Notes: generated by a model not told the origin, from the letters alone. A DNA stretch of 64,000 bases from Vitrella brassicaformis CCMP3155 (GCA_001179505.1 CDMY01000603.1:186001-250000), one strand, 5' to 3'. Numbered from the stretch's first letter, positions 20,508 to 61,224 are shown. Numbers and translations: made by a program.

Positions 20508-23500
20508 TTATTCGTCGATCATCTCGACTTCTGTGACGGCCGGTGGTGCGACGGTGGGGTCGGGCGGGTAGCGGAAGAGCCAGTCACGGAACCTCTCCAG
20601 CTCTGCCAGGTGCTCGTCCAGACGAGCCTGCCCGCCCTTGACCAACTCGTTGCCCCGCTGGATCAAACCAGACTGAAGACAGACACACAACATAAACACA
20701 GAGGGGGAGAGCTGGTGCGGGTGAAGGGGCGGGTGGGGGCGAATGTACCTTGGCGCAGAATCTTTGCACGAGTGTGGCGCGGTGGACCCGCATCTCCTCG
20801 TACTCGCGGACAGCCGCCGGCAGGAGGGCGTTCATCTCTGTGAAGCACATCGACATCGCAGCACATCAACTCAGCTAGCTCACCATCAACAGCACAGCAC
20901 AGCAAGGAAAGCCGCCCGCCTCACTCACATAACATACACAAGAGAGAGCGTCCCAGTACCTGCCGACTGGACCTTGTCAGCTCCGATGTCAGCGATGATC
21001 TTGTCGATGGCCGCAGTGAGGCAGTGCACGTCCTGATTGGTCAGATCGACACACCGACCAACACACACAACACGCCGTGTGTGTGTGTGTGTGTGCGACT
21101 CGGTCGCTTGGCTTGCCTCAAAGGTCTGGTTGGCGCCCTGGCCTGGATCAGGGTGGGGGGCGTGCGCAGCGTCACCCAGCAGCACCACACGACCCTACGC
21201 ACACACACGCGCACACACATTGAAAGACAGGTGCAATGCAGACACATCACACAGCAGACACAAGACACAAACAAGGGCATACAGACTTACGGAGGGTGTG
21301 CTCCACTGCTTGAGTGCCTTCCTCGCGTAGATGCCTCTCTGGTAGATGCGGCTGGCGGGGGTGGCCTTGACGCAAGCCACGATGTCGGCCACCTGACGCG
21401 GCACCTCCTCGCCCTTCTCGCCACCCCCTCCAGCTCCAGCAGCACCGCCACCGCCACCGCCACCGCCCCCTCCACCACGTGTGAGGTAGGCGATGACCTC
21501 CTCCTTCAGCCCCGCCGCACCGATCTTGCCGCGGCCGTCGAAGTGCCACGCCTCCACACGCACCTGCACATTGACACACACACAGACATACACACACAGA
21601 CATACATTGTGGTGTGGTGGGGTGGGCTGGGCTGGGATGGGTAACAGACCTGCCAGAAGGTTTGGCCGTGTCCGCATGGGCACATGATGCAGCTGAGCGG
21701 CGGGTCCTCGACGACCAGCTTGACCAGCTCGTGGGGGGCGTGCACCGGCTTGGTGGGGGAAACGATCGACTGCACACACGAAAATTTCGCCACGTGCGAG
21801 TGCGTGTGAGAGTGTGTGTGAGAGTGTGTGTGTCTGTGTCTGTGTCTGTGTGTTGGGGGAGGGGGAGGGGGGGAAGGTGCTCACGGATGTATCGACGATG
21901 GCGTTCCAGTTCTTCTGGCCTGTTGGATGCATTGCATTCGATGGCATGACATGGCTGGGGAGAGAGATGCAAAGCAAAGCAGCGCATACGTACCGAAGAA
22001 TATGGGTGAGTCTTCCTCTGGCGGCAGCCCCGTGATGCGCCTGCGCAGCGTCGAGAAGGCGCCGTCAGCCACCACCACCAAGTGGGCCCTGGTTGAGAGA
22101 CAAGATACACACACGCAACTCACTCACCCTTGACACACAAAACACTGTTTGTGTACTTGCCTGACGGTGTAAGTGTCAGGCTGCCCCTGGAAGCGCACAG
22201 TGACCTCGGCGCCCTCCTCTGTGAAGTCCCGCCCGCCGTGTGAGCAGTGGATGGCCTCCTTCGGACACAGAGACGCCAGGTGGTTCTGATGCACCCACCG
22301 GCCCCAAACGAAGGACACACACATGATGCCAGGCCATGCTGCCCCATCCCATACCCACACACAGGCACAGGCATGGCACCTGAGCGTGTGTCCAGGGGAT
22401 GATGACCGAGGCTGACTGGTACTGCTGCTCGAACAGGCCAAAGTCGCGAGAAGAGGCCGTCTCCTGAAGGAAGGCACAGACACACAACACGCACGAGCAC
22501 AGAGAGGGAAACACAACCAACAGGCGTCTGTCTGTGTGCGTCGGTCGCTCCCTGTGTGTGTGTGTGTGTGTGTTAGACTCACTCACAGCCAGACAGACTG
22601 ACTTACCGTGCCGTCGGCCTTGCGGAGCTTGTGGACGCAGACGGGCTTGGCGCACCCCGACTTCTTGAACATCTCCACCACTTGAGGAATGGCCCTCTCT
22701 AAGGCGCGCATGCCGTTGGGGTAGCAGTGGAACACACCCTGGCCACATACACACACACACAGACAGAAACATACACAGACGCGCACAAAGGTGCAGGTGG
22801 CTCTGGTGTAGGTGGCTTGGGTCGATGGCTTGCTTACCTGCGACTGGTATCTCAGGTCAGGCGCCCTCTCAAACACGTGTGCATCCAGCCCTCGAGACCT
22901 ACACGCAACACACACAAAGACACCCATCCATCCCTCTCCCTCCCTCCCTCCCTCCGACAAGTAAGTAGTACTCTCTATTCACCTGAGGGCCGCCCCGAGA
23001 GCGAGCCCCCCCAGACCGCCCCCAATGATGGCCACCTGCACAAAGGCCGGTGCCTTCACGCCCTCGGGCACCATGACGTGCTGCGAGGGGGCGCTGTAGT
23101 AGTAGTCACTGGGGGCCGCGTCGGTCGATGGCGATGGGGCGGGGTGGTGTGGCTGTAGGTGTGCTGGTGTGGAGGGCTGGGTGGATAGGGGGAGGGAGTG
23201 GAGGTAGCTCAGCACCTCGCTCTCTGACTTCACTTCTGCGTACTTTGCCTGCACGCACACACACACACACACACACACACATGGATGGACACACATAAAG
23301 GACAAAACAGGTGTGGCTTGCCTGCAGATCGAAGAGGCTGGCGTCATGCACCTCCTGCCGCCTATCCCCCACGGCCTCCCGCACCACCACCGGCACAAAG
23401 CCGTGCTGCAGGCAGTCGGTCGCCGTGGCGCGGATGCAGCCACTCGTCGACACGCCACATATGATGAGCGTGTCCACACGGAGGGCACACAGCGAACTCG

Positions 23501-55443: not shown

Positions 55444-55743
55444 NNNNNNNNNNNNNNNNNNNNNNNNNNNNNNNNNNNNNNNNNNNNNNNNNNNNNNNNN
55501 NNNNNNNNNNNNNNNNNNNNNNNNNNNNNNNNNNNNNNNNNNNNNNNNNNNNNNNNNNNNNNNNNNNNNNNNNNNNNNNNNNNNNNNNNNNNNNNNNNNN
55601 NNNNNNNNNNNNNNNNNNNNNNNNNNNNNNNNNNNNNNNNNNNNNNNNNNNNNNNNNNNNNNNNNNNNNNNNNNNNNNNNNNNNNNNNNNNNNNNNNNNN
55701 NNNNNNNNNNNNNNNNNNNNNNNNNNNNNNNNNNNNNNNNNNN
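55444..55743. other. Assembly gap (300 N) followed by a poly-C tract
   Basis: N run. Confidence 0.99.
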
Positions 55744-55800: not shown

Positions 55801-58800
55801 TCACTGTTTGGCGGCCTCGTCGCCACCGTCGTCTTCGGCCAGGTCATTGAGGCTGGGCTGCCCCTCAGTGTCGGGGAACTTGTTGATCCACCCCTTGAAC
55901 GACACCAGCAGCTCGCTGAGCTTCTTTCCTGACACGCGACGACCCTCACGCTCGGCGTCGCCCACCTGACACACACACACACACACACACACGATGTTTC
56001 AACGGTGGGTGTGGGGGACAGTGAGAGAAAGACGTTACCATGGTAGAGAACTGCTGGACGACGGACGCCCTGGGCACACGGACCTTCTCGTAGGCAGCCA
56101 CGGCGTCGGGCAGCCGATGCAGCCACGTGCCGTCACCACCTGCGGTGCACACAGACACACACACACACACACACACACATGACGCTTGATCGACGATTCA
56201 GTGCACGGCAGTAGGCAATACCGTGTTTCTCTCTCAGTTTGCCGATTTCGTCCACCAGCACGGCGACGTCCTCAAACACCTGGTTGGCCCCCTGCCCGGC
56301 CAATGGGTGCGGCGCGTGGGCCGAATCGCCCAGCAGCACCACACGACCCTGCACACACACACACACACAGAGGCATCCTTGCGCCACTCTGCCATTCTGC
56401 GTGTCTGAGCGGCTTGTTCACCCTGGGCGAGCTCCACTTGTCGATGGCGTCTCGCGAGAACATGTGCCGCTCGAAGATCTGCTCCTCAGGCGTGGCACTG
56501 ATGGCCGCCATGATGTCGCTGTGCTTGCTGCTGTAGTCCGCTCCACCAGTGCCGTCAAGCCGGCCCGTCTTGACGTAGTTGAGGAGCCGCTGCCGCACCC
56601 CCTGACGGCCAATGGCGCTGCGGCCGGGGCGGGAGGCATCGGGGGCGGGGAGGCGCAGCTGCGCACAACACACACATGCAGATAGATAGATGCCCCCACA
56701 CACACAGAGAGGGAGGGAGATACATCCATCCGTGTGACGAAGAGGGCAGAGGGGCGTGTGGGGCGTACGTACGAGCCAAAAGGTGAGACCCGAGCCGGCG
56801 TCGACAAGGAATGCCGAGAGGAAGGGTGTGTTGCTGTCGACCTTGACCACCTCATGGTCGCCATGCACCCTCTCACCAACGCTCTGATCACACACACACA
56901 CGCGCGCCCACGTAGATCTTTGTCTCTTTCGTAGCTCTCCTCTCTCTCTCTCTGTCCACCGCGTGGCTGACCTCAGTGGGGATCATGGCATTGTATGAGA
57001 TGTTCTTGTAGTAGTGCGGCGGGTCCTGCACAAGCACCGACGCCGCAAACGGGTTCAGGCCGCCACCTTTGCCCCCAGCCGCCGCCATCTCCTCAGGGGT
57101 GCTCGCAGCCGTCTGCTGCTGCTGCTGCTGGCTGCGCGATTGCGCCACGATGTGCGGGCGGAGAGCTGAGAAGGAGCCGTCAGCTGCGACCACTAGAGAC
57201 GCCCTGTAAGGTAGCCGCCGCACCACCACACACAAGACAAGACAAGACAAGACACACATGGAGTGTTTTGTGAGTGAATGGTGTGCTGGATGTTGAGGGT
57301 CGGATCATGGTGTGTGTGATGTCCTTACTTGACGTGGTAGTCGTCGGGCCGTCCTTCGAAGAGCATACACACGTCCTCTTCGGTCTCGGTCCATCCGCGG
57401 GCGCCATGGCCGCAGTGCACCACATCCGACGGCACGTGAGACGCGAAGGTGTTCTGAGCGGCTGTCCACCGCATCATGACACACGGGGCGCCGAACTTGT
57501 CGACGTACTGATCGCGCTTCAACGCAGTGCGCGTCTCCTGACCAACACAGCCACCACAGCCGGAAAGGGGCATGTGCGTGGGGGGCATGTGCGTGGGGGG
57601 TGGGGTTGTTTATGCTTACCGGCAATTCGTCTTTGCGTACGACCAGCTGTGAGGAGGGGCAGAAAACGCCGGTCTGCTCGAACTCGTCGGCGATGTCGCG
57701 GTAGGCCATGCGGATGGCCTTGATGCCGTTGGCGTCGGCCATGAAGATACCCTGGCAGGGTGTGGTACACACAACACACACACACACACACACGCACGCA
57801 CGCACACGCACACATAGCAGACAGACATCCACGCCGACGTGCAAGGATGGTAGGATGGTGTGATTTGTTCGTTTCGTGCCTGTGATGCATTTCTCAACGC
57901 AGGTGCGCGCTCAAACACATGGGCATCGATACCGCGCTTCCTATAATCGGCAAACACCACACCACACACACAATGCACTGCAGTGCAGCCACATCCACCC
58001 CTATTATGCTCAGTTTCTCACCTGAGTGCGGCGCACAGCAGGAGCCCCCCCAGTCCCCCGCCAGCGATGGCCACCTGCACCCTCTCGGGGATGCGCCGGC
58101 CGCTCTCCACATCGCGGCCGCTCTCACCCCACTGCCGGCTCACTGACCTGAGACGCAAATCATCAGGAATGGACGTCTCGCACGCCTAAAACATGAAAGA
58201 AGGAGAGAGAGAGAGGGGGGGAGGGAGGGAGGGATGGATGAGTGTGTCGGCCTGTGTGTGAAGGGAAGTGAATGTGGGCGTCTGTCGTCGGGTGACTGAC
58301 CTTGAGTATGGCGGGAAGCGACCACTCCACCGCCTGTGTGGGCTGGGCGATCTCTTTCTCGGCAGCCGAGCTGCCGCACGCGTGACTGAGGGCCTCGTCG
58401 AGCACAGCCCCCAATTGGCGGGGGACGGGCAGCCAGTCGCCCTCACCCACGGATGCGCTGTCGCCCTCCCGCTGCTGCTGCGACATGTAGACGGTCACTT
58501 CCCTGCAGACACACCACCACCTGGGTCTGTCTGAGTGTCTGTGCGGTGTCTGTGTGTGTCGGTGTGCTGACTGTGGCAGAGATGCGGTTGATGTCAAGAA
58601 GGCCTGCTCGGTGTGGGCGGGGTCGAGAGCGACGGCGCCGCCGCACGATGACAGAAATCCCTGAAGCATGAAGACGACGACAGACACACGTATTTATTGC
58701 GGGGTGCTGTGCTGTGCTGTGCTGTGTCTGTGTTGTGTGTGCGGCTCGCCGGACCTTCAGGAGCGCCTCGGCAACATATGGGCAGCGATGCAGACTGATC

Positions 58801-61224
58801 AGGCAGGGTGAGAGAACACACCCACCGCACATTTGGTGATAACAGCATGTGACTCACCCTCCCACTCACCCACCTCTCCGCGTCTGCCCCCTTCTGCGAA
58901 GGGATGACAGCGAATATATCCAGCCGCTGGATGACAGGCTCACCCGTCAGAGCATCAACCTCCACCTGACACACACCACACCACACACAGGATGATGATG
59001 ACACACAGCAAAATGCAAGCAATGTGCCCATCCATCCCATTCATCCGCAGACGGACCATCCATCCACGACTCACCTACCTCTGCGGCAGCAGCCACGTCA
59101 CGCCCTGCCATCTGTGCCGACTTGACAGCCACGCCCCTCTTGCGCCACCGGTTGTCACCGTTGTGCTTGTCAACCGCCGCACACCGGTCGCCCCATCCTA
59201 TAGAAGCCTTCAGCCGCTCAACCGCCGCACCCTCAGCGCACCCCGCTGCCATCGCCACAGAGCCGCCAAGCTTGGCACCGGTGAGTGAGATCTGCTGCCA
59301 TTGGTGGCCTTGTTGCTGTGCCATGATGGAGATCGACGGGAGGGGCGGTGTGGGGGTGAGTGAGAGGGATGGCAGGACGGCGGTGATGAATCGTGGGGAG
59401 GGGGCGGCGAGGTGTGTGTCGTCGTAGGAGCCGCGGGAGACCTCCCCGCCCAGCAGCACCAGGAACTTGAACAGCAGCGCCTGAGTGCCGCTGGGGACCT
59501 GACCGCTCATCTGACATCCATCCCAGTAGCAGGCCACACACACATCATTCAATCACATCCATCCATCCATCCACCACACCTGACCTGTGCGTTGGCGATC
59601 TTCAGCGCTTCCCATGCAGTCTCCTCGGTCAGCCCATACCCCTGCAGGAACTCCTCCACCCGCCCGAGCCGCCCCATCCCACCCTCCCAGCTCGCACACA
59701 CCCGCACTTCACGCAGCTGCCGCGTCACCGCATCCAATGCTGCCCAGCAACACACGCTGCCCACCGGCCGCCCCGTCCGCACCGGCGATGCCGTTCTGTA
59801 GGCACGATAGAGCGACTGTGCGGCGTCGATCGGCTCTGGCAGCGGCAGGGTGACCGACACGAGCAGGTAGTCGCTCCATTTGATGGTCTTGTTGTTGGGG
59901 TAGCCGATTCGGTCGAGGAAGGCCTCGATGGGCAGGGATGTCGGCTGTGGCTGTGGGTGTTGCTGCTCGCCGGATGACGACAGGTCGGCTGTGGTGTAGA
60001 ACTGCACGGATGCCTGCCATGTGACGAGAGCGGGAAGCAGGTCGGCGGCCGCGCCGCCCCTGCTGGACCCGCTCAGCTCACGCAGCACAGCACCGCCCAC
60101 CGTAAGCACGTTCCTCAGACCTCTCGGGGCAACCACACGCAGATGGTCCGCCAGTGCGTCGAAGTGCGATGCCTTCATGTCGGCCCGGTCGTGCCGCTCG
60201 ATCGTGTCCATCACCTGCTGCAGCACCACCGACGCGCCGAAGGTGACGTGAGTCGTCTGCGAGTCGATGCCGCGCATGGCCGGCAGGTCGCCCACGGCAA
60301 TGCGCGCCTGGCTTTCGGTGAGTGAGGTGTGGTCGAACGTGCTGCTGCCGTAGAGCAGCTCGAATGAAGGGGCCGGGGTGGCGGATAGAGTGGCCTGCAG
60401 CTGCTGCATCGATGTGGGCAGGTGGACGAACGCCGGCAGGTGCTGCAGCGATGAGGATGGCGGGATGGGCGTGGGCGTGGGGCGGAGTAGTGTTTCGATG
60501 AGCGAGAGGGGCGCCTTGGTCTTGTCGGCGATGTCCTTGGCCAGAAAGGAGGTGTCGAGGGTCGCGAGAAACGACAGCGCCTTGCACAGATCCGTCGCAT
60601 CTGAGCGATAGATACGTCAACGAACGCATGCATCACGTTATGCCATGCATCCCTCCCACTACCTCCCACTCCACTACCTGACTCACCATCTCTGTCGCAC
60701 GGCACACTCGCCACCCAGTCGCGCATCGCCTCGCTGTCCATCAGCCCCTCAGCAGACGAAGCGCCACCGCTCACCAGCACCCCCGCCGCACCCACAGCAA
60801 CGGCCGCACCGACACCGCCCCATTTCTCGGCCATGGTCTGCAGCTCCGCGGGCAGGTGCTGCAGCGTGGTGATGGTGGCGCCCTGCACGGCCACTGCGGA
60901 CACCAGTCGTGTGTAAGTGGGTGTGGGAGGGGTGGTCCATCCGCCGTGAAGTCGGTCGGGGAACGACACAAGCGCCGCGAAACACTCAAACTCTGCAGCG
61001 GCAGCAGCAGCGGCAGCAGCAGAGGGACAGACAGACAGACATGCATCATCGGCACGTTGCATGCGTTTGTGTGAGTGGCAGTTATTCCACCCACCTGTGC
61101 GGCCTGTGTGTTGCAGGACATCCAGGAGCGACGCGTTGGGGTCGATGCCGGCAGAGGGGATGCGCGCCGTCTGCCCGTCCAGCTGGTACACCAGCGGACT
61201 CATCTCGCCAGTGCCGTCAGCCAT
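55801..61224 (-). CDS. Fusion: degenerate, internally deleted xanthine dehydrogenase/aldehyde oxidase-like region plus class A FAD-dependent monooxygenase
   Basis: XDH-like traces: LVYQLDG...IDPNASLLDVL, GLRNVLTVGG...DLLPALV, ALLFKFLVLL, AVDKHNGDNRWRKRGVAV, AAEVEVDALTGE...RLDI, SASVGEG. Monooxygenase: VAIAGGGLGG, VFERAP, VVAADGSFS, VLLGDSAHAPHPLAGQGANQ. Joined by the phase-0 intron 58300-58186. Confidence 0.8.

What the first reader, a model, noticed from the sequence alone, without database searches (positions are those of the whole stretch)
55801..61224. Cofactor-stripped xanthine dehydrogenase skeleton fused to an intact flavin monooxygenase
Seen: XDH/aldehyde-oxidase landmarks in the right order, but the Fe-S ligands are gone. 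The GCxxGxCGAC position reads [15 protein letters not shown], and the QCGFC position reads GGVGAAVAVG. Most of the Moco-binding domain is missing: the chain jumps from the FAD-domain tail (ALLFKFL) via a short linker to AVDKHNGDNRWRKRG, then directly to EVEVDALTG. The exons still splice in phase with few apparent lesions, and the downstream monooxygenase keeps all three FAD fingerprints. Inference: a maintained non-catalytic XDH-derived module (scaffold, FAD/NAD(P)H supply, or substrate sensing) attached to a monooxygenase. I know of no description of this architecture.
Basis: partly seen in the sequence, partly recalled or inferred. Interest (0 to 1): 0.85.

Follow-up and report, generated by a model that had tools for sequence, protein, structure and literature searches.

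The report
Dead aldehyde-oxidase half on live monooxygenase
This alga (Vitrella brassicaformis) expresses a spare copy of a two-enzyme fusion gene in which the aldehyde-oxidase/xanthine-dehydrogenase half has lost its metal and molybdenum sites while the attached flavin monooxygenase is fully conserved, which gives a clear natural example of one domain of a fusion protein decaying but is not a new kind of system.

Summary
Window 61224-55801 (minus strand) is one 18-exon, 1281-aa gene of Vitrella brassicaformis, already deposited as CEM25789.1 with no function assigned. Spliced transcript contigs join the XDH-like part to the monooxygenase, and their lengths fit removal of the 58186-58300 intron.

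The architecture is not unique. The same genome has intact paralogues on another contig with all aldehyde-oxidase/XDH domains fused to the same monooxygenase (CEL95367.1, 1925 aa). Nannochloropsis has the fusion too. So the fusion came first and this copy decayed afterwards:
- 2 of 8 Fe-S cysteines remain.
- About 610 residues of the Moco domains are deleted in frame.
- 17 of 41 conserved FAD-domain residues remain.

The oxidase half evolves about three times faster than its intact paralogue (155 vs 49 unique changes). The monooxygenase half evolves at parity (42 vs 39).

The decay is not fully neutral. The FAD-type domain keeps its hydrophobic core beyond a stop-free neutral simulation (66 of 73 positions, 55 expected, P=0.001) and is predicted to fold.

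Best reading: a working group A flavin monooxygenase carrying a catalytically dead, partly still folded oxidase remnant. Whether the remnant has a role is open. I found no orthologue, and the substrate is unknown.

The parts
55801..61224 (-). Whole coding region: 18 exons, 1281 aa (CEM25789.1). Exons in window coordinates: 61224-61095, 60992-60687, 60600-59585, 59510-59079, 58965-58874, 58794-58755, 58660-58572, 58502-58301, 58185-58022, 57940-57880, 57751-57620, 57537-57329, 57203-56972, 56883-56773, 56658-56422, 56348-56222, 56139-56039, 55965-55801
   Evidence: The spliced translation is 1281 aa with no stop. The 274-aa exon-3 query matched P0001 at 100% (residues 210-483), and the printed P0001 sequence equals the model. 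Eleven introns are listed directly as GT..AG joints in contigs of runs X1 and X6. The other six fit the contig length bookkeeping.
60823..61224 (-). Remnant of the N-terminal plant-type [2Fe-2S] beta-grasp (aa 1-100). Three of its four cysteine ligands are lost.
   Evidence: Alignments. AF2 pLDDT per 10-residue block is 64-91. Hydrophobic-core columns kept: 22 of 26.
60443..60822 (-). Remnant of the second [2Fe-2S] helical domain plus linker (aa 101-198). It is Ala/Gly-rich, and one of four cysteines is kept.
   Evidence: No Pfam Fer2_2 hit. AF2 pLDDT is below 50 for residues 103-198. Core columns kept: 18 of 28.
59585..60442 (-). FAD-binding PCMH-type domain remnant, FAD_binding_5 plus the CO_deh_flav_C region (aa 199-484).
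   Evidence: PF00941 scores 47.7 bits against a cut-off of 27. AF2 pLDDT per 10-residue block is mostly 80-95, with dips to 58-73. Foldseek top hits are XDH/AO. Conserved residues kept: 17 of 41. Core columns kept: 68 of 77.
58301..59510 (-). Inter-domain linker and fragments of the Moco domain (aa 485-769). These include the WRKRG segment (59219-59118) and the EVEVDALTG segment (59093-58900). About 610 residues are deleted relative to the paralogue.
   Evidence: BLASTP against P0003 and alignments. No Pfam Moco hits. In AF2, aa 575-654 score 63-87 and much of the rest scores below 50.
58186..58300 (-). Phase-0 GT-AG intron joining the last oxidase-derived exon (ends ...AILK) to the junction exon.
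   Evidence: Contig record 13 of run X6 has exactly 779 nt between genome positions 57536 and 59077. That count fits only if this intron and 57752-57879 are removed. The same intron position and phase occur in the paralogue gene.
58022..58185 (-). Junction exon (aa 770-823). A single exon carries the oxidase C-terminal tail (ACETSIPDD...) and the monooxygenase GGGLGG dinucleotide-binding motif. There is no in-frame ATG before the motif.
   Evidence: Sequence reading. The homologous exon in P0002 and P0016 begins with ACGTT.
55804..58086 (-). Group A flavoprotein monooxygenase domain (aa 803-1281). It carries the GxGxxG motif (58062-58045), the DG motif (57187-57158) and the GD motif (56333-56268).
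   Evidence: PF01494 scores 52.7 bits against a cut-off of 22. PDB relatives are 8rqh, 3rp6 and 5eow. Rate parity with the paralogue: 42 vs 39 unique changes. The ML branch is shorter than the paralogue's.
60993..61094 (-). Intron 1 (102 nt, in frame).
   Evidence: GT..AG ends. It is removed in the deposited protein. The X6 contig 15 piece ends at 60989, with 201 further nt unplaced.
57752..57879 (-). GC-AG intron inside the monooxygenase part.
   Evidence: The donor reads GCACGA. Its removal is required by the contig length bookkeeping and by the deposited protein.

Best explanation
The gene is an expressed, old paralogue of a fusion enzyme found in Vitrella. The fusion joins an aldehyde-oxidase-type molybdo-flavoenzyme to a group A FAD monooxygenase.

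Shown: in this copy the oxidase half is catalytically dead. It has no Fe-S ligands and no Moco domains, and its FAD motifs are degenerate. In-frame genomic deletions shortened it, but it is still transcribed, spliced and in frame with the downstream monooxygenase. The monooxygenase is conserved as strongly as in the intact paralogues.

Inferred: the protein works as an ordinary NAD(P)H- and FAD-dependent aromatic or heterocycle hydroxylase, and its catalysis no longer depends on the upstream half. The remnant persists first because the monooxygenase has no start codon of its own, so stops and frameshifts upstream are selected against. It persists second because its beta-grasp and FAD-type domain appear to be kept foldable. 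The substrate is unknown.
For: - One gene, spliced. Contigs of runs X6 and X1 carry GT-AG joints. One 2487-nt contig runs from the FAD-domain exon through the Moco remnant to the monooxygenase, and its length fits the junction intron being removed.
- Paralogy. The monooxygenase tree places P0001 as sister to Vitrella P0003/P0016 with 100/99 support. Exon phases 0,1,1,0 match at the 5' end. A 202-nt phase-2 exon, a phase-0 junction exon and a 61-nt phase-2 exon are shared with the P0002 gene.
- Dead oxidase half. 2 of 8 Fe-S cysteines are kept. Conserved columns kept are 10/35 in the Fe-S part and 17/41 in the FAD part, against 27-39 in functional relatives. There are no Pfam Moco, Fer2 or Fer2_2 hits, and phmmer finds no PDB hit at E<=1.
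- Relaxed constraint only upstream. Tajima counts are 155 vs 49 in the oxidase part (p=1e-13) and 42 vs 39 in the monooxygenase (p=0.74). ML end branches are 6.75 vs 0.6 for the oxidase part and 0.52 vs 1.13 for the monooxygenase.
- Still translated sequence. GC3 is 0.76-0.82 in the remnant exons, as in the monooxygenase (0.81), while introns are flat at 0.53-0.56.
- Strong purifying selection on the monooxygenase N-terminus. It is 80% identical at the amino-acid level with saturated pS of 0.61.
Against: - No protein-level evidence and no enzymology exist.
- The transcript evidence comes from assembled contigs, not raw reads or full-length cDNA. Exon 3 is covered by three separate contigs with short breaks. 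Upstream contigs have lower depth (12-14 vs 33.6), so an additional internal start is not excluded.
- AF2 confidence in the monooxygenase middle region is low, but the alignment there is shallow.
- No orthologue exists for a per-domain dN/dS, and pairwise dS to the paralogues is saturated.
Confidence: 0.72

Rival explanations
1. The oxidase-derived remnant is a maintained pseudoenzyme module. It would be a folded, cofactor-free beta-grasp plus FAD-type domain that serves the monooxygenase, for example as a dimerisation or docking scaffold toward the intact AO-FMO paralogues, or as a ligand-sensing domain.
For: - Hydrophobic-core columns are kept at 47/53 and 21/24 in the FAD-type domain, as in functional paralogues, against a background of 0.43.
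- A stop-free neutral simulation, calibrated on the loss of conserved residues, expects 55.1 +/- 3.7 of 73 positions. The observed count is 66 (P=0.001).
- AF2 block pLDDT is mostly 80-95 (dips to 58-73) for aa 200-515, while the Fer2_2 region built from the same alignment scores below 50.
- The rate acceleration is only 2.1x in the FAD domain, against about 5x in the Fe-S and Moco parts.
Against: - The alignment itself favours matching hydrophobic positions, and AF2 confidence leans on the intact homologues in the alignment.
- 24 of 41 conserved FAD-domain residues are gone, including the GNT and GGN motifs.
- Most of the Moco domain, which forms the dimer contact in XDH/AO (established knowledge of those structures), is deleted.
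- No orthologue shows long-term retention.
Confidence: 0.3
2. The remnant is pure ballast, a long N-terminal leader kept open only because the monooxygenase depends on the upstream start codon. It would evolve neutrally apart from the exclusion of stops and frameshifts.
For: - Large in-frame deletions.
- Loss of every cofactor site.
- A disordered Fer2_2 region with Ala/Gly/Pro/Ser/Thr enrichment (0.47 vs 0.41 in the paralogue).
- A 3-5x rate acceleration.
- No in-frame ATG in the junction exon.
Against: - The FAD-domain core is retained beyond the neutral simulation (P=0.001).
- It is retained significantly better than in the Fer2_2 region (68/77 vs 18/28, Fisher p=0.009).
- After a duplication old enough to leave only 38-44% identity in the constrained monooxygenase, a truly neutral 770-aa stretch should be unrecognisable. 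It still aligns to P0003 at E=1e-31.
Confidence: 0.35
3. The XDH-like and monooxygenase parts are effectively separate products. The monooxygenase would be made from an internal promoter or internal start (for example Met707), and the upstream exons would be a transcribed pseudogene.
For: In run X6, contig depth is 33.6 for the 3' contig and 12-14 for the two upstream contigs. Run X1 covers the upstream part only in fragments.
Against: - The 3' contig already contains 79 nt of the FAD-domain exon, all Moco-remnant exons and the junction, properly spliced.
- The remnant exons keep coding-type GC3.
- All 17 introns keep the frame.
- Contig depth is not a valid measure of expression level, by the tool's own note.
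Confidence: 0.1
4. The whole gene is an expressed pseudogene with no functional product.
For: Half of the protein has clearly lost its ancestral function. No orthologue was found in 1.84 billion representative proteins.
Against: - The monooxygenase evolves no faster than its intact paralogue (42 vs 39 unique changes; branch 0.52 vs 1.13).
- It keeps all three FAD/NAD(P)H fingerprints.
- Its N-terminus shows dN/dS of about 0.13.
Confidence: 0.05

Closest known systems
Vitrella brassicaformis CEL95367.1 (P0003, 1925 aa) and CEL95372.1 (P0002): intact aldehyde-oxidase-type enzyme fused to a FAD_binding_3 monooxygenase
   Same: Same genome and same domain order. The junction exon and intron phases match. 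The monooxygenase is sister in the tree (100/99), and the first 58 residues of the FMO domain (aa 803-860) are 79% identical.
   Different: The paralogues keep all 8 Fe-S cysteines, the FAD motifs, the hammerhead and both Moco domains. The window gene lacks about 610 residues and is only 27-31% identical in what remains of the oxidase half.
Nannochloropsis oceanica 'indole-3-acetaldehyde oxidase-like' 1902-aa protein (P0007) and a related 1815-aa protein (P0006)
   Same: Same AO-plus-group-A-monooxygenase fusion, with a similar short junction.
   Different: They are fully intact oxidases. Their monooxygenase is 34% identical to the window's. The tree does not resolve whether the two lineages share a single fusion event.
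Eukaryotic aldehyde oxidases and xanthine oxidoreductases (e.g. PDB 7px0, 4uhw, 3zyv, 1fo4)
   Same: The predicted fold of aa 1-560 superposes on their Fe-S/FAD half (Foldseek E about 1e-17, TM 0.56-0.62). The intact paralogue scores best against aldehyde oxidases.
   Different: The window protein has no Fe-S ligands and no Moco domains, and sequence search finds no PDB relative. Even the intact Vitrella and Nannochloropsis forms have Ala at the column of the GGKE motif, where I place bovine XDH Glu802 from memory. That points to an aldehyde or heterocycle oxidase rather than a xanthine dehydrogenase.
Group A flavoprotein monooxygenases: tropone 2-monooxygenase (8rqh), urate hydroxylase HpxO (3rp6), 6-hydroxynicotinate 3-monooxygenase NicC (5eow), salicylate hydroxylases
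   Same: The GxGxxG, DG and GD fingerprints are shared. phmmer E-values run from 1e-19 to 1e-12.
   Different: No family-level match. NCBIfam urate_HpxO scores 74.8 bits against a cut-off of 500. The domain has lineage-specific inserts such as a poly-Gln stretch, and the substrate is unknown.
Pseudoenzyme or degenerate domains retained inside multidomain proteins (general concept)
   Same: Loss of catalytic and cofactor residues, with retention of a fold-like sequence pattern and of the reading frame.
   Different: No function has been shown for the remnant here. Part of it is deleted or predicted disordered.

Membership tests
Xanthine oxidase family molybdo-flavoenzymes (XDH/AO) | Two [2Fe-2S] clusters bound by eight conserved cysteines (Fer2 and Fer2_2 domains) | tested here: not met
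   Only C47 and C151 remain of 8 invariant cysteine columns. There are no Pfam Fer2 or Fer2_2 hits. Residues 103-198 have pLDDT below 50.
Xanthine oxidase family molybdo-flavoenzymes (XDH/AO) | FAD-binding PCMH-type domain (PF00941 plus PF03450) with its conserved FAD-contact motifs | tested here: inconclusive
   PF00941 scores 47.7 bits, above its cut-off of 27, and the fold is predicted confidently. PF03450 is not detected, and only 17 of 41 conserved residues are kept (GNT to GSS, GGN to GGA, FPSD to A.AD). FAD binding cannot be decided from sequence.
Xanthine oxidase family molybdo-flavoenzymes (XDH/AO) | a/b hammerhead and two molybdopterin-binding domains (PF01315, PF02738, PF20256) | tested here: not met
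   There are no Pfam hits, whereas paralogue P0002 scores 59-222 bits on these domains. Residues equivalent to P0003 576-1034 and 1069-1219 are absent.
Xanthine oxidase family molybdo-flavoenzymes (XDH/AO) | Descent from the family (homology) | tested here: met
   BLASTP against P0003 gives E=1e-31 over the N-terminal half, plus the WRKRG and EVE.D.LTGE segments. Intron phases are shared.
Group A flavoprotein monooxygenases (PF01494, FAD_binding_3) | GxGxxG beta-alpha-beta motif, DG motif and GD motif, with a Pfam score above the cut-off | tested here: met
   GGGLGG at 811-816, AADGSFSALR at 964-973 and LGDSAH...GQGANQVFED at 1157-1178. PF01494 scores 52.7 bits against a cut-off of 22.
Group A flavoprotein monooxygenases (PF01494, FAD_binding_3) | NAD(P)H-dependent hydroxylation of a bound substrate | not testable with these tools
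   This needs enzymology. The only indirect support is evolutionary constraint equal to that of the paralogue.
FAD-dependent urate hydroxylase HpxO | NCBIfam equivalog NF033623 at or above its cut-off | tested here: not met
   The score is 74.8 bits against a cut-off of 500. Vitrella is reported to have a conventional urate oxidase (PMC6320678). The fused oxidases have Ala at the GGKE-motif column where canonical XDHs carry a glutamate (bovine Glu802, placed from memory).
AO-monooxygenase fusion proteins of Vitrella and Nannochloropsis (an undescribed group defined here) | A single chain with a complete AO/XDH module followed by a group A monooxygenase | tested here: not met
   The fusion junction and the monooxygenase are present, but the AO module is incomplete. 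The gene is a degenerate derivative of this group.

The most novel reading that the evidence does not exclude
Chromerid and eustigmatophyte algae have an undescribed bifunctional enzyme family that couples a molybdenum aldehyde or heterocycle oxidase to a flavin hydroxylase for two consecutive steps. In Vitrella, a duplicate has been converted into a genuine pseudoenzyme fusion. Its cofactor-free but folded FAD-type domain would be retained because it docks onto or regulates the monooxygenase, or pairs with the intact paralogues.
Probability: 0.25. Interest if true: 0.65.

Novelty: new variant of a known kind. Interest (0 to 1): 0.45.

Why it matters
There are two points of interest.

First, the intact aldehyde-oxidase-to-monooxygenase fusion in Vitrella and Nannochloropsis appears undescribed in the searchable literature. 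It is a 'Rosetta stone' link suggesting that the two enzymes act on consecutive steps of one unknown pathway.

Second, the window gene is a clean natural experiment on what happens to one half of a fusion protein once it is no longer needed. The reading frame, splicing, codon usage and part of the fold survive. The cofactor sites and whole domains are lost. The downstream enzyme stays under full constraint.

It is useful for annotation, because the UniProt name 'FAD-binding PCMH-type domain-containing protein' hides both facts. It is also a candidate pseudoenzyme domain. It does not open a new class of system.

Tried and rejected
- **Urate hydroxylase idea.** XDH followed by an HpxO-like enzyme was my first guess for the fusion. 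I rejected it as a family assignment. The HpxO model scores 74.8 bits against a cut-off of 500. The fused oxidases lack the xanthine-binding Glu. Vitrella is reported to have urate oxidase.
- **Nicotinate-pathway cluster idea.** NicC-like hits and a NicF-like fusion elsewhere in the window suggested a cluster. The neighbouring genes are unrelated: ribosomal S13, a KH protein and a tRNA synthetase. The other monooxygenase, at 21117-23071, is only 30-38% identical.
- **Gene conversion.** I tested this as the cause of the 79-80% identical monooxygenase N-terminus and rejected it. Synonymous sites are saturated (pS 0.61).
- **Orthologue search for dN/dS.** An exhaustive HMMER search with the FAD-domain exon found only this protein and the paralogue cluster among 1.84 billion representatives. 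Pairwise dN/dS to the paralogues is unreliable because dS is saturated.
- **PDB search with the remnant.** phmmer of aa 1-560 against the PDB gave nothing at E<=1.
- **Alignment problems.** A full-length alignment (A1) and one that included stand-alone monooxygenases (A4) misaligned the Moco remnant or the monooxygenases. I did not use either for structure prediction.
- I left those two sequences out entirely and built a new alignment.
- **Spliced aligner artefact.** My own spliced aligner produced spurious micro-exons for the last 13 residues of P0002. That tail is next to an assembly gap, and I ignored it.

Full report
**Gene model and source.** The region holds one minus-strand gene. I built the exon chain from the sequence and from splice joints seen in public contigs. 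The result is 18 exons from ATG 61224 to stop 55801, 3846 coding nt and 1281 aa with no internal stop. An exhaustive HMMER search with the largest exon returned a deposited 1281-aa protein that matches it at 100% (residues 210-483), and whose printed sequence equals the model (P0001). It is CEM25789.1 / UniProt A0A0G4GAN1 of Vitrella brassicaformis CCMP3155, contig CDMY01000603.1, named only 'unnamed protein product' or 'FAD-binding PCMH-type domain-containing protein'. An earlier scan note had already named the organism. I confirmed it here.

**Transcript evidence.** Runs X6 and X1 contain contigs that skip the predicted introns at GT..AG boundaries, whereas run X2 carries the unspliced genomic form.
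- Contig 13 of X6 (2487 nt) runs from 79 nt inside the FAD-domain exon, through every Moco-remnant exon and the junction exon, to the 3' end of the monooxygenase.
- The joint at 58186-58300 is not among the 15 printed joints. However, the contig has exactly 779 nt between genome positions 57536 and 59077. That equals the summed exons only if both this intron (115 nt) and the GC-AG intron 57752-57879 (128 nt) are removed.
- Contig 15 of X6 is spliced at 60601-60686. Its aligned piece ends at the acceptor of intron 1.

So the oxidase-like and monooxygenase parts lie on one processed transcript. The limits are that these are assembled contigs, that exon 3 is covered by three contigs with short breaks, and that the upstream contigs have lower depth. 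An additional internal start cannot be excluded.

**The observation.**
- Pfam sees only FAD_binding_5 (47.7 bits) and FAD_binding_3 (52.7 bits).
- Among 53 outgroup aldehyde oxidases and XDHs, 8 cysteine columns are invariant. The window protein keeps two of them.
- The second Fe-S motif reads GGVGAAVAVG, and the CRCTGYRP motif is gone.
- After the FAD domain tail (ALLFKFL) come a 38-aa filler, a 34-aa WRKRG segment, and then EVEVDALTG. About 459 and 151 residues of the paralogue have no counterpart.
- The monooxygenase keeps its three fingerprints.

One correction: the poly-Ala stretch lies in intron 1, an in-frame 102-nt intron that is removed in the deposited model.

The same genome has intact versions of the same fusion.
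- P0003 (CEL95367.1, 1925 aa) and P0002 (CEL95372.1) lie 8 kb apart on contig CDMY01000227.1. They are at least 90% identical (one cluster). P0002 was scanned and has Fer2, Fer2_2, FAD_binding_5, CO_deh_flav_C, hammerhead and both MoCoBD domains, followed by the start of the same monooxygenase. P0003's precomputed Pfam list adds FAD_binding_3.
- P0002's monooxygenase is cut by an assembly gap. P0016, at the start of another contig, is a further copy of the 3' half and begins exactly at the junction exon.
- An unfused relative, P0026 (1331 aa), also exists.
- The fusion also occurs in Nannochloropsis oceanica (P0007, 1902 aa) and in a related 1815-aa protein.
- The intact N-terminal half scores best against aldehyde oxidases. 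At the GGK-x column (GGKE in canonical XDHs; I place bovine Glu802 there from memory), Vitrella P0003/P0002 and Nannochloropsis have Ala and the unfused P0026 has Ser. The family therefore looks like aldehyde or heterocycle oxidases rather than xanthine dehydrogenases.
- I found no paper describing this fusion or this protein.

**Origin.**
- In the monooxygenase tree, P0001 is sister to P0003/P0016 with 100/99 support.
- Gene structures match. The first four exons have phases 0,1,1,0 in both genes. Both have a 202-nt phase-2 exon, followed by a phase-0 junction exon starting AC(E/G)T, followed by a 61-nt phase-2 exon.
- The window gene's exon 4 combines the 5' part of ancestral exon 4 with a fragment of exon 9.

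The gene is therefore a DNA-level duplicate that later lost ancestral exons 5-8 and 10-11, and parts of 4, 9 and 12, through deletions that preserved the frame.

**Selection: the two halves behave differently.**
- With Nannochloropsis as outgroup, the oxidase part has 155 changes unique to P0001 against 49 unique to P0003 (p=1e-13). By region the counts are 39:7 for Fe-S, 54:26 for FAD and 54:11 for the Moco remnant. The monooxygenase has 42 against 39 (p=0.74).
- In ML trees, the P0001 end branch is 6.75 for the N-terminal half, against 0.6 for its paralogues. For the monooxygenase it is 0.52 against 1.13.
- The monooxygenase N-terminus is 80% identical with saturated synonymous sites. That indicates purifying selection, not gene conversion.
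- The remnant exons keep coding-type composition (GC3 0.76-0.82), while introns are flat at 0.53-0.56. The remnant is therefore translated sequence, not a UTR or a dead pseudogene.

**Is the remnant only ballast?** Not clearly.
- At columns that are hydrophobic in at least 80% of outgroups, P0001 keeps a hydrophobic residue at 47/53 (FAD_binding_5), 21/24 (CO_deh_flav_C region) and 22/26 (beta-grasp). These are like the functional paralogues. The Fer2_2 region keeps only 18/28.
- I ran a stop-free neutral codon simulation started from the paralogue's codons and tuned to the observed loss of conserved residues. It predicts 55.1 +/- 3.7 of 73 core positions for the FAD domain. The observed count is 66 (P=0.001). 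The beta-grasp and Fer2_2 regions are marginal (P=0.05 and 0.07).
- AlphaFold2 on aa 1-560 gives block pLDDT of mostly 80-95 (dips to 58-73) for the FAD-type domain, 64-91 for the beta-grasp and below 50 for residues 103-198. The model matches XDH/AO structures.
- For aa 575-1281, the first 80 residues of the Moco remnant are moderately confident (63-87) and much of the rest scores below 50. The monooxygenase core scores in the 90s, but its middle region is low with a shallow alignment.

Two caveats apply. Alignment favours hydrophobic matches, and AF2 leans on intact homologues. I read this as moderate evidence that the FAD-type domain is kept foldable, without evidence that it binds FAD. The GNT, GGN and FPSD motifs are altered.

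**Function.** The monooxygenase is a generic group A enzyme. Its nearest solved relatives are tropone 2-monooxygenase, HpxO, NicC and salicylate hydroxylases, and no curated family cut-off is reached. The substrate is unknown. The intact fusion suggests oxidase-then-hydroxylase chemistry on one compound class, but that is inference. The window protein most likely acts as a stand-alone hydroxylase with a dead N-terminal extension.

**Verdict.** The oxidase half shows strongly relaxed constraint, with a possibly retained folded core. This is a new variant of a known kind and of moderate interest.

Noticed in passing
window 55444-55743: A 300-base run of N (an assembly gap), preceded by a poly-G tract, lies about 60 bases after the stop codon. 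The 3' UTR of the gene is therefore cut in the assembly.
   Followed up: no
L001 10001-15750 and L003 55-2299: The intact paralogue P0002 (CEL95372.1) is truncated inside its monooxygenase by an N run right after exon 18, so its last roughly 13 residues are probably artefactual. P0016, at the very start of contig CDMY01000219.1, begins exactly at the junction exon and is 81% identical overall (gaps included) to the 3' half of P0003. It is a candidate for the missing half, or a third copy.
   Followed up: partly
P0003, P0002, P0026, P0007 (alignment A1): At the GGK-x column, where canonical XDHs have the GGKE glutamate (bovine Glu802, placed from memory), Vitrella P0003/P0002 and the Nannochloropsis fused oxidases have Ala and the unfused Vitrella P0026 has Ser. 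They keep the GEPP glutamate and the R.PG arginine. They look like aldehyde or heterocycle oxidases, so the canonical XDH reported for Vitrella may be yet another gene.
   Followed up: partly
window 59334-59480 (aa 495-543): The linker between the FAD and Moco domains is the best conserved piece of the oxidase half between the two Vitrella paralogues (57% aa identity, 70% nt identity). It also has a lower synonymous difference (pS 0.40 vs 0.55-0.61 elsewhere), although it is not conserved with Nannochloropsis. With only 46 codons this may be chance or an old conversion tract.
   Followed up: partly
window 57752-57879: This is a GC-AG intron (donor GCACGA). The homologous intron in the P0002 gene has a normal GT donor.
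   Followed up: partly
window 55966-58100, many introns: Several introns of this gene end in (TG)n or (GT)n runs directly before the CAG acceptor, for example at 55966-56000, 56140-56180, 56349-56375 and 57752-57810. The read tool skipped these places as repeats.
   Followed up: no
window 21117-23071 (minus strand): This is a second group A monooxygenase, 30-38% identical to the one studied here. It is not a close paralogue, and there is no catabolic gene cluster around the studied gene.
   Followed up: partly
window 59585-61224, run X6: Transcript contigs over the 5' half have lower depth (12-14) than the contig over the 3' half (33.6). This could be 3' bias or an additional internal transcription start.
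   Followed up: no
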